Shown: positions 50,851 through 55,973 of the stretch, in pieces
Layout of the letters: each line of letters opens with the position of its first letter
How positions within the stretch are numbered: the first letter of the stretch is position 1
NCBI GenBank assembly: GCA_044892525.1
Contig: CM097886.1
Coordinates: forward strand, 39,432,001-39,496,000
Direction of reading: 5' to 3'
Length of the DNA stretch: 64,000 bases
From: Schmidtea polychroa
Taxonomy: Eukaryota
Notes under the pieces: model-generated
What the model saw: only the letters and a program-made list of their open reading frames with translations
Database searches by the model: none
What the model was told of the DNA's origin: nothing
Made by a program: the position numbers and the translations under genes

Positions 50851-51563
50851 TTTTATTATTATTATTAATAATTTATTATTAATATTATTATTATTATTAT
50901 CAAAATTATTATTGCAAATATTAGTGAAAAACCTAAAATATTTACACACACAATTTATGGGGTAGAGACAGTGGCGTAGCTATGGTGGGGCGGGGGGGCG
51001 GGACGCCCCGGGCGGCACTTGCTCTGGGCGGCATTTTCGCGATGAGATCGTCTGTATGGTTCTTAAACCTGAATGCACTAAAATAAATATATACGTATAT
51101 ATTTGTTGCATGTACCAATCATACCCTGAATTTGTCCAGTCTACACGCAGCTTCAATGGCTATCAATTCGGTAACTTTTTTGGAGTTTTGGATCGCCTTT
51201 ACGTATTTTTTTCTTCCTCTACTCGTCGATGGAACATTCTGACATCGGCGACTTCTCAAAGTCTCAAACGCGTATTAGAAACTCGATGGAGTGCAAGGGC
51301 TAAAGCTGTGAGTGTCTTAAAAAATAATTTCTCAAACATTTTAAATTCTTTATAAGATTTGACTAGCGAAGAAGAAAACACATGCACCAGATCAGAAGCT
51401 GGCTTACTACTTGGTGCGTTGCAATCATTTTCATTTTTGTGTTTTCTTGGTCTATGGGAATCAGTTCTGGTAGAAATTAATGAAACACAGAATTACCTCC
51501 AAACTAAAGGGATAAATATACAAAATTGTGATATAAAACTTAAGGCTTTAAAGTCATTTTTAA

Positions 51564-54221
51564 CCTTTTAATGCATGGAATTGTATGTTGAGATTTTTTC
51601 AAGTTTTTTGACTTAAATCTTATTCCTCGGAGTATCCTCATGGACAATTGTGCCTCGATGAGTAAATAGAACGCATTTGAGTACACTTATTCGTTGGACT
51701 TTAATGTAAGTCAGCATGCATTAAGGGTAGCAATAACAACAAGTAAAGGGAAACACTTAACAATGCATCCAGAAAAGTCTGTGAGTGTAGTAGAACATAA
51801 ACAACAGTCAATTAATGTGATAGTCATAAAAGCAGTTGCGATCATGAGTCAAGCAGAGGTTAACGTCGCATTTCGAGCATTTCACCATAGTGCGTCCAAC
51901 TTTTTCTTTCCTGAGATCCATACATAGTCGACACTTTTGCTGGTTAGAAAGATAAATTGGCCAATGTCCAATTCCATCGTGTCTGGTGTCTTCAACTGGC
52001 GTGAAGGATCTTTTTCTCTTATTTTGAGACACAGTTTTCACAGTTTTACCCACAGAGAGGAAGCAATCGGCAACCTCTGTTACGAATTTCAACACAGTGT
52101 ATCGCTTCTTCTTGGATGTTTTCAATCGCTTTTCTTGATCTCGGTGAAGAATCCAAGCGTTTACTACCATCACATTTAATGTGTAAAAAAAGAGATGAAG
52201 ATACCACTTGTGAGTTTTTAAAGTCACCCGATACAACGATACCAACATATCATGCAAATCCACTCCACCCATGTGTTTGTTGTACACTTGTACAATTTTG
52301 GGGCAGTCGACTTTCACACGCTCTTTCTTTTCTGCGTTGTATCGGTCACATTGTTCTCCCAAATCCGCATTCAGGTAATTGCTGGCCAGCTGAACGACAC
52401 CAGAATCCATCCACCGCAATACCAGAACGTTGGAATTTTCTTCTACTCGCCAATCAATACTCCCTCTTCCACGTTTTTTAAGAGCAGTCTCTTTCTCCAA
52501 AAACTTGTCACAACCTTTTGTGCGGTTCTTTCGAATAGTGCACACCGTCCATAGGTTCAATTGACGCAGTTGTATTAGAAGAGGTATACTGCTGAAGTAA
52601 TTATCAAAGTATAACTTGTAATTTGTCGCGCTTGTTGGAAGGGTGTTACAAAGTTTTAACACAACATCTATACCAATCCCAAAAGCGCTGTGGTGGGCAT
52701 TTGCCTTCCCTGTGTAAATTTCAAAATCGAATAACAATCCGTTTACACCACAGCGAGCCCAAACCTTAATTCCCCACTTGGAAGGCTTATTAGGAAGGTA
52801 TTGCCTCACCGGATTACGTGACTTTGTTGGTATCATCTGCTCGTCAATAGCCTGATGTTCCGTGTTTCGCAAACTGAGGCATACTTTACGAATGTAATCA
52901 AGGAGGGGTCGTGCTTTATACAGTTTATCATAATGTGGGTTTTCACGGTTAGGTAACAGGGCGTTGTCGTTGAAATGCAAAAATCTTTTGATTTCGTCAA
53001 AGCGGTTATTAGTCATTGAATTGGCAATTCGGGGAACGAATGTACTCGGACTCCAATACATACGGTTTTGAGGCAGTCTGAATACCCCATCAGCAGAAGT
53101 ATCCCTGAAATGCGATAAGAAATACATTGCACGAGTCAATGAATATAAACAATCTGCAGTCCGCTTACCTATAAATCTTTCCACTTCATCATTGGTAATA
53201 TACGCAGATTTGCCAGTCTGCTGAACAGAGTACATGTTTGATTGTGCCACAATCAAACTGATAAGCTCGTTGGTGAAAAATTTTTTGGCAAAGTCGTAAG
53301 GAGAGTACATGTCATTATCTTCTTCATGATCATCATTCTGCATTTCCTCAAACATCGTATTCTGCTCAGCTGGAGCATGCTTCTTCCATCTATATTCCTC
53401 ACGCAGTGTTTCATATAGATCTTCTTCAGGCGCCTCTTCATTTTCATCTTCATCTATATCCACCAACTCGTACTCAGCAAGGTGTTGTGCCTCAATATCT
53501 ATCAGCTCTTCCTCCTCTTCATCGCCACTAATGTCACTTATTTCAGCTGTTGGTAATACCAAATGCGTATCAGCAACTCGTTTCTTCTTTTCGAATCGCA
53601 TTTGAGCTATACTTTTAGCTTTACGTTGTGGAGGTTTCATTTGCCTGCAATAAGTAAAAGTAATTCGTAAAATTTAATTTGAAATATGCAAATAGTATGT
53701 AAACAATAAAATATGAATGGTCCGAAATTATTTTTAGGGTTGGGTTTGGGGGTTAGGGGACTCCCTACCACCCACCCCCTAATGTATGAGTTTATGTAAA
53801 AGATAAAGAAAGTATGAATTACTGGTTTTTAATTACCCCTTAATGCATGCTGACTTATATTAAAGTCCATCAGTAAAACATTGCATTCCAACAAATTCGC
53901 CATTTAATTTTTTTGGAATTACTTTAATTTGTCTTACAGCAGCTTTAGAATTCATAATAACATGACAATAAATCATTCCTACCTATACAAATCCACGTAA
54001 ACAGCGTTTTAAAATTTTCCAAAATTTTACATTAATTAAACAAATGTTAATCATAAAATATTATATAAAAAATGATTATCTGTCCTACATATCGTTACTT
54101 CATGTTGTACTATCCCCATACTTAATATACAACACATTTTCTGCTTTGTTACATCATCATGGATATGTTTTACGAGTCATTTCTTCATGGACTTTTATTT
54201 AAGTCCATATGCATTAAAGGG
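51564..54221 (-). mobile_element. piggyBac DNA transposon, full length (2658 bp)
   Basis: TTAA TSD (51560-51563, 54222-54225). TIR CCTTTTAATGCAT / ATGCATTAAAGGG (12/13). 32-bp internal inverted repeats at 51696-51727 and 53837-53868. Excision restores the host hAT frame (KSFL|IDNKNK). Confidence 0.96.
51808..53640 (-). CDS. piggyBac (PGBD-like) DDD transposase; 610-aa ORF that reads through a 64-nt intron-like segment
   Basis: Acidic N-terminus. AIDEQM, QYLPNKPSKWGIK, YFDNYF, YNKHMGGVDLHD. C-terminal Cys-rich domain CRLC..CSKCDVNLC..NCFYDYH. GT-AG segment at 53168-53105; probable 5'UTR intron at 53836-53645. Confidence 0.9.
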   Translation of the reverse strand: MKPPQRKAKSIAQMRFEKKKRVADTHLVLPTAEISDISGDEEEEELIDIEAQHLAEYELVDIDEDENEEAPEEDLYETLREEYRWKKHAPAEQNTMFEEMQNDDHEEDNDMYSPYDFAKKFFTNELISLIVAQSNMYSVQQTGKSAYITNDEVERFIGKRTADCLYSLTRAMYFLSHFRDTSADGVFRLPQNRMYWSPSTFVPRIANSMTNNRFDEIKRFLHFNDNALLPNRENPHYDKLYKARPLLDYIRKVCLSLRNTEHQAIDEQMIPTKSRNPVRQYLPNKPSKWGIKVWARCGVNGLLFDFEIYTGKANAHHSAFGIGIDVVLKLCNTLPTSATNYKLYFDNYFSSIPLLIQLRQLNLWTVCTIRKNRTKGCDKFLEKETALKKRGRGSIDWRVEENSNVLVLRWMDSGVVQLASNYLNADLGEQCDRYNAEKKERVKVDCPKIVQVYNKHMGGVDLHDMLVSLYRVTLKTHKWYLHLFFYTLNVMVVNAWILHRDQEKRLKTSKKKRYTVLKFVTEVADCFLSVGKTVKTVSQNKRKRSFTPVEDTRHDGIGHWPIYLSNQQKCRLCMDLRKEKVGRTMVKCSKCDVNLCLTHDRNCFYDYHIN

Positions 54222-55973
54222 TTAATAGATAATAAGAATAAGCTAGTGGAAAATTCAATAATATATGCCAAGGAAATTTGTGTTGATTTAGGAATTATCA
54301 TCGAGCATCAGCGTCGGTGCAAAAAAAAAAGAATGTTTGATGAAGGATCCAATGATGCTGAATTGCCGTATGAAACTGAATTGCAAAGAAAAATGTTTTC
54401 TTCTCTAGATAGGGTTATTCAAGAAATAAATACGAGATTTAAACAGATTCATGTTCTTGCTGAAAAATATGGATTTCTTGCCCATCTAATCTTTTAAACG
54501 AAGATTATAATTGTCAGATAAGTGATGATCATTACGATATTAATAAGGAAGAATTCTTTATTGAAAGAAAAAGATTAATAAGTTTCGTCGCTGCCGCAGC
54601 TATGCGAGATGAAACAGACATATTGAAAGAAAACCCCTTTGAGCTTTTACAGTTCATTCAAAAATATAATCTTGGAAATTCCGTACCCAATATTGTCATT
54701 TTATTACGAATTTTCCTGACAATTGCTGTAAGTGTGGATAGCTGTGAGAGAAGTTTTTCAAAATTAAAATTAATTAAGAATTACTTAAGATCTTCTATGC
54801 ACAGTTTACGGTTGAGAAATCTTGCCATATTATCAATAGAACATCAATTATCGGAGGAAGCAGACTTCGATGATGTTATTGATGACTTTGCTGGACGAAA
54901 AGCAAGAAGAGTAATTATGTAGATTGTAGAATATAGTTTATGGGTATTAATATTCTAAGACAATTAAAAAGTATCAGTTGATGATTGTCATATTATATTG
55001 TGTTTATTGTTATATTACATTAGTGTCCTTTTTTATTTTAATACCAATTTATATAAACAACTTTTGTATACAATATTTTTAGTTGTTGGCTAATTTTATA
55101 ATTAATTTATTTTGTGTTATTTACTCTGTAATGATATGTTAATTTTGTCTTGTTTTATACTATTTGATAATATTGCATTCTATTGTATTATTTAAAAATT
55201 AAATATAATGATAATTTGACAATGCGTAATTTATTATATGTTTTAATGTATTATAAAACACTTTGTTTAAATAAGAAAAAAATATTTCATACAAGAATAA
55301 ATAGTATGTATATGTGAAGGGTATGTAGCGTATTTGGAAAGGGAGGCAAAATGGGCCGTTTGTTTTGGAAAGTTTTTATTTTAAAAAATGTACAGGGGGG
55401 CGGCAATTTTAAGGATCGCCCCGGGCACATACCCTAGCTACTTTTTTTGATTCATTTTTTGTTTTAATTTTGTGTTTGTTATTTTTGTGTTGAGTGAATT
55501 TTATTTAGTGGTTTAATTGATGTTTGGAAGTGTTTCAGTTTGACCTGACTTGATGTTATGTCTGCGTGCTATGTTCCCACGTCTTTCAGTCACGTTTCAA
55601 CTACTTGGGCTCAAAATCAGTTCTAACCCAAAAAATACAGTTGTAAACATGTTATTGATTTATTAACTTGTCTAAATTATGTCAAGCCATCACCTGAAGC
55701 CAGACAAATACTTATAGGAGAGAAAGGAAAAAGAGGCTCTGATTACTGATTAAATAGTTTATTAATAACATTATATATTTATTTATGACTTGAGAATTTA
55801 AATACTCATCATTCCAATTTAAATATTGATTATTTAAATAAAAGTATAGATCATTTCTAATAAAATACTAATCAAAATAATTTAACTTACTAAACATTTA
55901 ATTAAAAAAATACTGATCATTTCATTTAAAATACTTATTATTTAATTAATCGTAATTATATCAGTAATTTATG

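What the first reader, a model, noticed from the sequence alone, without database searches (positions are those of the whole stretch)
53085..53168. piggyBac transposase whose full-length ORF exists only if its intron is retained
Seen: on the minus strand the 610-aa ORF contains a canonical intron (ATAG|GTAAGCGG...TTTCTTATCGCATTTCAG|GG; 53168-53105; 64 nt = 3n+1). Splicing gives FIG-ILLLMG, the conserved piggyBac-family helix (EI..F.GILLLMG), but the frame then shifts (YSDCLK...) and stops about 20 codons later. The family reading ILLLMG-VFRLPQNRMYWS would need G5 in ATGGGGTA, where this copy has G4. Without splicing, the stop-free intron and the missing G cancel out (net +63 nt), restoring all three catalytic Asp residues and the Cys-rich domain but replacing ILLLM with 26 foreign residues. 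Inference: either a splicing-controlled on/off switch (a reversed P-element IVS3 logic), or a one-base deletion or homopolymer error with chance read-through. A stop-free 21-codon stretch is not rare enough to exclude chance.
Basis: partly seen in the sequence, partly recalled or inferred. Interest (0 to 1): 0.75.

Follow-up and report, generated by a model that had tools for sequence, protein, structure and literature searches.

The report
Decayed piggyBac copy, chance read-through ORF
One copy of a piggyBac-type jumping gene has lost a single G next to its short intron, which by luck makes the unspliced gene read as one long ORF; every other copy examined keeps the G and needs ordinary splicing, so this is a broken copy, not a splicing switch.

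Summary
On the minus strand a 610-aa piggyBac ORF (51808-53640) reads through a 64-nt GT..AG intron (53168-53105). The intron is followed by a G4 run (53088-53085).

Every other copy I could find has G5 and keeps the intron:
- three metagenome contigs, L001, L002 and L003;
- the contigs of three sequencing runs from three separate studies, X6, X1 and X7.

With G5, removing the intron gives the family motif FIG-ILLLMG-VFRLPQNRMYWS and an open frame of 590 codons including the stop. Leaving the intron in splits the gene into 211-aa and 414-aa ORFs.

The window copy is a private, decaying insertion:
- 12 private substitutions in 2658 bp;
- 7 nonsynonymous against 2 synonymous coding changes;
- a conserved Gly changed to Ile;
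- the 3' terminal GGG changed to AGG.

A stop-free read-through of such an intron is expected by chance about one time in four. The G4 is therefore either a real 1-bp deletion or a homopolymer miscall; I could not tell which.

No RNA data were obtainable, so splicing is inferred, not shown. What remains is an ordinary intron-bearing piggyBac-like element, comparable to Daphnia Pokey, nested in a hAT element. Low interest.

The parts
51564..54221 (-). Complete piggyBac-like element, 2658 bp, transposase gene on the minus strand
   Evidence: Similarity to independent copies L001/L003/L002 (97.8-98.8% identity) starts and stops exactly at the flanking TTAAs. Contigs in runs X1 and X6 show the empty site as a joint 51559->54222 with a 4-nt overlap.
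51560..51563 (.). TTAA target-site duplication, low-coordinate side
   Evidence: the empty-site joint.
54222..54225 (.). TTAA target-site duplication, high-coordinate side
   Evidence: the empty-site joint.
51808..53640 (-). 610-aa read-through ORF: exon 1, retained intron, 20 nt of exon 2 read out of frame, then the rest of exon 2
   Evidence: PF13843, E 1.3e-69. One search shows the 21-aa insertion relative to 16 relatives.
53169..53640 (-). Exon 1, 472 nt, ending ..GAA AGA TTT ATA G
   Evidence: It is open in L001 and L003 as the first part of their 211-aa ORF.
53105..53168 (-). 64-nt spliceosomal-type intron: GTAAGC donor, TTGAC branch-like site about 31 nt from the 3' end, pyrimidine tract and CAG acceptor
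   Evidence: It is kept with 0-1 substitutions in L001, L003 and L002. Its removal restores the family motif and, with G5, the frame.
53085..53088 (-). G4 run. All other copies have G5, so this is a private 1-nt deletion or a homopolymer miscall.
   Evidence: for L001, L002 and L003. In one search, table 4, runs X6, X1 and X7 all 'put in C behind 53084' at full contig depth.
51808..53104 (-). Exon 2: DDBD, catalytic DDD core and Cys-rich domain. Its true frame is the one used from GTA TTC AGA (VFR) onward.
   Evidence: P0001 and P0122 (414 aa) and P0121 (424 aa, length as expected for a start 10 codons upstream) are this exon's ORF in G5 copies.
51564..51566 (-). 3' terminal triplet. It reads AGG on the element strand, where L001, L002 and L003 have GGG.
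   Evidence: …GCATTAAAAGG|TTAA against …GCATTAAAGGG|TTAA; position 51566.
52039..52047 (-). 9-nt (3-aa, VKT) indel. It is present here and not reported as missing from the X6, X1 or X7 contigs, and absent from L001, L002 and L003.
   Evidence: table 4, lists no deletion at this place.
51695..51727 (.). Subterminal inverted copy of the terminal repeat, 3' side. It pairs with 53837-53869 at 97%.
   Evidence: I2. It is also present in L001 and L003.
53837..53869 (.). Subterminal inverted copy of the terminal repeat, 5' side
   Evidence: I1, I2.
51056..51559 (+). Host hAT-like element, the part before the insertion
   Evidence: Contigs joining 51559 to 54222 without the piggyBac element.
54226..54922 (+). 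Host hAT-like element, the part after the insertion, including the hAT dimerisation domain
   Evidence: (PF05699, E 8e-12, for 54602-54922).

Best explanation
[quoted passage not shown] In the family's normal state (G5), the gene has two exons. Splicing gives FIG-ILLLMG-VFRLPQ and an open frame of 590 codons including the stop (about 589 aa). Leaving the intron in breaks the frame. The window copy has one G fewer in that run, either from a real deletion or from a homopolymer miscall in the assembly. The intron is 3n+1 long and happens to be stop-free in the exon-1 phase, so the -1 cancels the +64 and an uninterrupted 610-aa ORF appears. That ORF is an accident of decay. Its conserved hydrophobic helix is replaced by 26 unrelated residues, and the correctly spliced mRNA of this copy is frameshifted. 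This copy therefore most likely makes no working transposase. Shown here: the anatomy, G5 in all other copies, the private mutations and the chance level. Inferred: that the intron is spliced in vivo, and that the read-through protein is inactive.
For: (1) G5 is found everywhere else. L001 (ENA), L003 and L002 (two JGI samples) read ATGGGGGTATTC. Contigs of runs X6, X1 and X7, from three studies, all insert one C behind 53084 at full depth. (2) These copies lie at other loci, because their flanks differ. The intron-bearing structure therefore spread by transposition. (3) In G5 copies, gene callers give split, overlapping ORFs of 211 aa and 414/424 aa. Exon lengths of 472 + 1298 nt = 1770 = 590 codons are in frame once the intron is removed. 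(4) The family alignment shows the 21-aa insertion only in the window ORF, exactly at I-G-[IM]-L-x-x-M. (5) Apart from the P0001 cluster (98% identity, 4 members), the closest protein in the 5.8-billion-cluster collection is only 49% identical. No second read-through ORF close to this one was found. (6) The copy is decaying. It has 12 private substitutions against the run consensus. Seven coding changes are nonsynonymous and two synonymous, including Gly324 to Ile in the conserved G-x-G-G motif. Its terminal GGG has become AGG. (7) A stop-free read-through has a chance probability of 0.24-0.30. (8) In the AF2 model of the 610-aa ORF, pLDDT is below 50 over residues 170-203, and the insert is 159-184. 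(9) There is a precedent: the piggyBac-family element Pokey of Daphnia has a 68-84 bp intron whose splicing was confirmed by RT-PCR (PMC3849761).
Against: No RNA evidence was obtained. The only raw RNA run offered (X23) laid no reads, and the run guessed to be RNA (X6) holds an unspliced full-length contig that may simply be DNA. Contigs drop rare variants, so G4 copies at low frequency cannot be excluded. Only one 64-kb window of the source genome was visible, so its other copies were not counted. The AF2 model rests on a 17-sequence alignment and is weak evidence for loss of function.
Confidence: 0.85

Rival explanations
1. Assembly artefact. This locus really has G5, and the G4 is a homopolymer undercall of the long-read assembly. 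The copy would then be an ordinary two-exon copy with both exons open.
For: A 1-nt error in a G5 run is the typical long-read mistake. The window comes from a scaffolded assembly with N gaps. Every contig laid on this place shows G5.
Against: The copy carries 12 private base substitutions, which are not the typical long-read error, so it is a truly distinct and mutating copy. One indel among 13 private differences is a normal proportion. None of the laid contigs carries this copy's own private letters, so they say nothing about this locus itself.
Confidence: 0.28
2. Splicing-controlled switch. Intron retention yields an active full-length transposase and splicing yields a truncated product, with the choice regulated by tissue.
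For: The ORF is complete, with all three catalytic Asp residues and the Cys-rich domain. A 21/26 complementary pair between the start of the ORF and the 3' splice site appears in the predicted pre-mRNA fold and could mask the acceptor.
Against: G4 is private to this copy, and the family state is G5, where retention truncates the protein. The retained stretch destroys a conserved helix. The copy shows neutral decay and a mutated terminus. The stop-free read-through is at chance level.
Confidence: 0.03
3. The 64 nt are not an intron but an unspliced insertion, for example a templated repair insertion. All copies carrying it are dead and were moved in trans by another transposase.
For: No RNA evidence of splicing was obtained. 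Relatives, including the closest one (P0002, 49% identity), are intronless single ORFs. The 3' end of the 64 nt is complementary to a stretch near the start of the ORF (I4), as a templated insertion might be.
Against: The stretch begins AG|GTAAGC and ends with a pyrimidine tract plus CAG|G, with a branch-like TTGAC about 31 nt upstream. Its exact removal recreates the family motif and, with G5, the frame. That combination is very unlikely for a random insertion. Both exons are otherwise open in L001 and L003.
Confidence: 0.07

Closest known systems
Pokey, the piggyBac-superfamily element of Daphnia (Elliott et al. 2013, PMC3849761)
   Same: An autonomous piggyBac-type element whose transposase gene is interrupted by one short intron. 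The intron is 68-84 bp in Pokey and 64 nt here. In both, reading without splicing gives a shorter or wrong ORF.
   Different: Pokey's splicing was confirmed by RT-PCR, whereas here it is only inferred. The proteins are only distantly related. Whether the intron sits at the same position was not compared.
Canonical piggyBac-like elements: T. ni piggyBac (PDB 6x67/6x68) and piggyBat (PDB 9c0f)
   Same: The DDE_Tnp_1_7 core, the DDD triad, the C-terminal Cys-rich domain, TTAA target duplication and CCC..GGG termini.
   Different: Those elements, and most described piggyBac-like elements, have a single uninterrupted ORF (PMC5381638). This family has an intron and long subterminal inverted copies of its terminal repeat.
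Drosophila P element IVS3 retention (established knowledge, not tested here)
   Same: In the G5 family state, intron retention would give an N-terminal truncated protein of 211 aa. This is formally like the P-element 66-kDa repressor made when IVS3 is retained.
   Different: There is no evidence of regulated retention, of a splicing repressor site or of a function for the truncated product. The 'reversed' logic proposed for the window copy rests on a private mutation.

Membership tests
piggyBac superfamily transposon | Transposase with the DDE_Tnp_1_7 (PF13843) core | tested here: met
   E 1.3e-69, 235.6 bits against a cutoff of 22.4; matches to piggyBat 9c0f and piggyBac 6x67.
piggyBac superfamily transposon | Catalytic Asp triad and C-terminal Cys-rich domain | tested here: met
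   D266, D346, D461 and C570, C588, C591, C596, C603, H608 are invariant across 17 sequences.
piggyBac superfamily transposon | TTAA target-site duplication and precise empty site | tested here: met
   the joint 51559->54222 with 4 shared letters in contigs of X1 and X6.
piggyBac superfamily transposon | Terminal inverted repeats starting CCC and ending GGG | tested here: met
   Met for the family (L001, L002, L003). In the window copy the 3' end reads AGG, a private change.
Intron-bearing autonomous piggyBac (Pokey-like organisation) | Short spliceosomal intron whose removal restores the full transposase frame | tested here: met
   Met at the sequence level in G5 copies (frame arithmetic 472 + 1298 = 1770 nt).
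Intron-bearing autonomous piggyBac (Pokey-like organisation) | Spliced transcript observed | not testable with these tools
   X23 raw RNA reads: 0 laid.
Splicing-controlled transposase switch (P-element IVS3 type) | Both isoforms encoded by the family's normal or active copies | tested here: not met
   The retained-intron full-length ORF exists only in the window copy. All other copies have G5.
Splicing-controlled transposase switch (P-element IVS3 type) | Tissue-specific intron retention | not testable with these tools
   No RNA data were available.

The most novel reading that the evidence does not exclude
In the normal G5 family, retention of the 64-nt intron is regulated and yields the 211-aa N-terminal protein as a transposition inhibitor, in the way P-element IVS3 works. 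The regulation might involve the long-range pairing between 53589-53614 and the 3' splice site at 53097-53122. The window's G4 copy would be irrelevant to this.
Probability: 0.07. Interest if true: 0.5.

Novelty: new member of a known kind. Interest (0 to 1): 0.15.

Why it matters
The result matters little beyond annotation. It shows that the long, intact-looking ORF in this copy is misleading. Automatic callers would report a 610-aa 'complete' transposase, whereas the family's real product comes from a two-exon gene. The useful residue is a young (98-99% identical copies), apparently intact, intron-bearing piggyBac-like family. An earlier scan note calls the genome planarian-like, which I did not verify. 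Such a family could interest people looking for native transposon tools or studying intron gain in DNA transposons.

Tried and rejected
- **RNA reads.** The one raw RNA run offered (X23, another organism label) laid 0 reads, so neither expression nor splicing could be tested.
- **Metagenome scan.** It returned only one close copy (L005, the same contig as L003). The other 17 loci are relatives at 29-38% identity.
- **Rescue of the G4 frame by another canonical splice site.** I read the sequence by eye. Shifting the donor or acceptor by the one base needed gives TA or CA ends. The next AG (..GGGGTATTCAG|A) leaves the wrong phase. Rejected.
- **Long-range pairing of the 3' splice site with the ORF start.** It is 21/26 complementary. 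One of 40 shuffles reaches this. It appears in the MFE and centroid fold, and the whole-fold z-score is -1.78. In L001 and L003 one more pair is lost (53595). This is too weak to build on and is kept only as a note.
- **AF2 model of the read-through ORF.** Confidence over the insert is low, but the alignment is shallow.
- **Organism.** I did not establish it. Run labels are coded, and I ran no further search on it.
- **Other copies in the same genome.** The tools showed me only this 64-kb window, so I could not examine them.

Full report
**Observation**

The minus strand of 51808-53640 is a 610-aa ORF. It matches the piggyBac transposase family PF13843 at E 1.3e-69.

Within it, 53168-53105 is a 64-nt stretch with the look of an intron. 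It has an AG|GTAAGC donor, a TTGAC branch-like site about 31 nt from the 3' end, and a pyrimidine tract ending CAG|G. Twenty nucleotides further on lies the G4 run at 53088-53085.

- **Spliced:** the message reads FIG-ILLLMG and then runs out of frame, reaching a stop after 23 codons.
- **Unspliced:** the ORF stays open, but residues 159-184 (26 residues) replace the five residues ILLLM.

In an alignment with 16 relatives, this is a 21-column insertion found in the window sequence alone. It sits exactly inside the conserved I-G-[IM]-L-x-x-M-x-[IV]-x-x-L-P-Q-x-R-M-Y-W-S block.

**The element and its setting**

The gene lies in a complete 2658-bp element (51564-54221) flanked by TTAA on both sides.

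- **Boundaries.** Similarity to independent copies begins and ends exactly at these TTAAs.
- **Host element.** The element sits inside a hAT-like transposon, whose dimerisation domain is at 54602-54922 (PF05699).
- **Empty site.** Contigs of two runs join 51559 directly to 54222 with four shared letters. This is the hAT sequence without the insertion.
- **Subterminal repeats.** The ends carry subterminal inverted copies of the terminal repeat at 51695-51727 and 53837-53869. These are also present in the other copies.

**The decisive comparison**

The protein search found one near-identical cluster, P0001, at 98% identity. Its members are 414 or 424 aa and cover exon 2 only.

The contigs that encode them were fetched:

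| Contig | Source | Identity to the window element |
|---|---|---|
| L001 | ENA assembly | 98.8% |
| L003 | JGI sample | 98.8% |
| L002 | a second JGI sample | 97.8% |

All three contigs share these features:
- They keep the 64-nt intron with at most one substitution.
- They read ATGGGGGTATTC, that is G5.
- Their flanks differ from the window's, so they are other insertions.

I also laid the contigs of three public runs from three studies on the stretch. In each run, at full contig depth, there is one extra C behind 53084, which is again G5 (table 4). One of these contigs spans the whole element with yet another pair of flanks.

With G5 the arithmetic is simple. Exon 1 (472 nt) plus exon 2 (1298 nt) is 1770 nt, or 590 codons. 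The junction reads FIG-ILLLMG-VFRLPQNRMYWS, which is the family motif. Without splicing, G5 copies break into overlapping 211-aa and 414-aa ORFs, as the gene callers recorded.

The closest more distant relative, P0002 (49% identity), is an intronless 594-aa ORF. The intron is therefore a trait of this family, not of piggyBac in general.

**State of the window copy**

Against the consensus of the three runs, the window copy has 12 private substitutions in the element as well as the missing G (table 3).

- **Coding changes.** Seven are nonsynonymous and two synonymous. This is what neutral decay after insertion gives. One of them turns a Gly of the conserved G-x-G-G stretch into Ile.
- **Terminus.** The 3' terminal GGG is AGG in this copy only.
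- **No other read-through ORF.** Apart from the P0001 cluster, the nearest protein in the collection is only 49% identical, so no second near-identical read-through ORF turned up.
- **Chance level.** A stop-free read-through of such an intron is not rare. It occurs in 0.30 of shuffles and in 61 of 253 natural 64-nt GT..AG stretches of the window in the same phase.
- **Structure.** The AF2 model of the 610-aa ORF has pLDDT below 50 from residue 170 to 203, covering much of the insert and the conserved segment after it. This is weak evidence, given the 17-row alignment.

**Conclusion on mechanism**

The family has a genuine short intron. The window copy lost one G, or the assembler miscalled a G5 run. 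Because the intron is 3n+1 long and open in the exon-1 phase, the two frame errors cancel.

- **Real deletion or assembly error.** I could not decide this. None of the laid contigs carries this copy's private letters, so they do not report on this locus. The many private substitutions make a real deletion somewhat more likely.
- **Splicing.** Splicing is inferred from sequence only. The single raw RNA run offered laid no reads.

**Comparison with what is known**

Described piggyBac-like elements are mostly single-ORF. Introns are noted chiefly in domesticated genes (PMC5381638). Daphnia Pokey, however, has a 68-84 bp intron whose splicing was confirmed by RT-PCR (PMC3849761). That makes this family another case of a known arrangement. 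The P-element analogy holds only formally, and only for G5 copies, where retention gives a 211-aa N-terminal product. Nothing here shows regulation.

**Side observation**

A 21/26 complementary pair links 53589-53614, near the start of the ORF, with 53097-53122, which covers the end of the intron, the acceptor and the first 8 nt of exon 2.

- Only 1 of 40 dinucleotide shuffles of the element reaches that level.
- The pair is present in the predicted MFE and centroid folds of the first 601 nt of the pre-mRNA.
- It loses one pair in L001 and L003 (53595), and no covariation test is possible.

I record it as a lead only.

Exons were handled separately by reference.

Noticed in passing
window 53589-53614 and 53097-53122: A 26-nt inverted repeat (21/26) lies between the start of the ORF and the intron 3' end, acceptor and first 8 nt of exon 2. 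Only 1 of 40 shuffles reaches this level, and the pair appears in the predicted pre-mRNA fold. It could mask the 3' splice site, be a relic of how the intron arose, or be chance.
   Followed up: partly
window 51695-51727 and 53837-53869: Each end of the element carries an inward subterminal inverted copy of the terminal repeat. Each end is therefore itself a long palindrome-like unit, 51564-51727 and 53837-54221. The inner copies are not flanked by TTAA and are present in L001 and L003, so this is a family trait and not nested MITEs.
   Followed up: partly
window 53737-53790: A G-rich then C-rich stretch (GGGTTGGGTTTGGGGGTTAGGGGACTCCCTACCACCCACCCCCTAA) lies in the 5' leader of the element.
   Followed up: no
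window 51056-51559 and 54226-54922: A hAT-like element is split by the piggyBac insertion. Public runs hold copies of it without the insertion, so the hAT family is multi-copy and the piggyBac insertion is the younger event.
   Followed up: partly
window 52039-52047: A 9-nt (VKT) indel separates two sublineages of the family. It is present in the window and not reported as missing from the three organism-A run contigs. It is absent from the three metagenome contigs.
   Followed up: no
element as a whole: Near-identical sequence is held by runs filed under eight different coded organism labels and by sediment and other metagenomes. This could reflect related species, contamination of samples by the host animal, or horizontal spread.
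   Followed up: no
L002:140-150: Copy L002 has an in-frame TGA in exon 1 (CAA TGA AAC where the others have CAA TCA AAC). The family therefore also contains other dead copies, broken in different ways.
   Followed up: no
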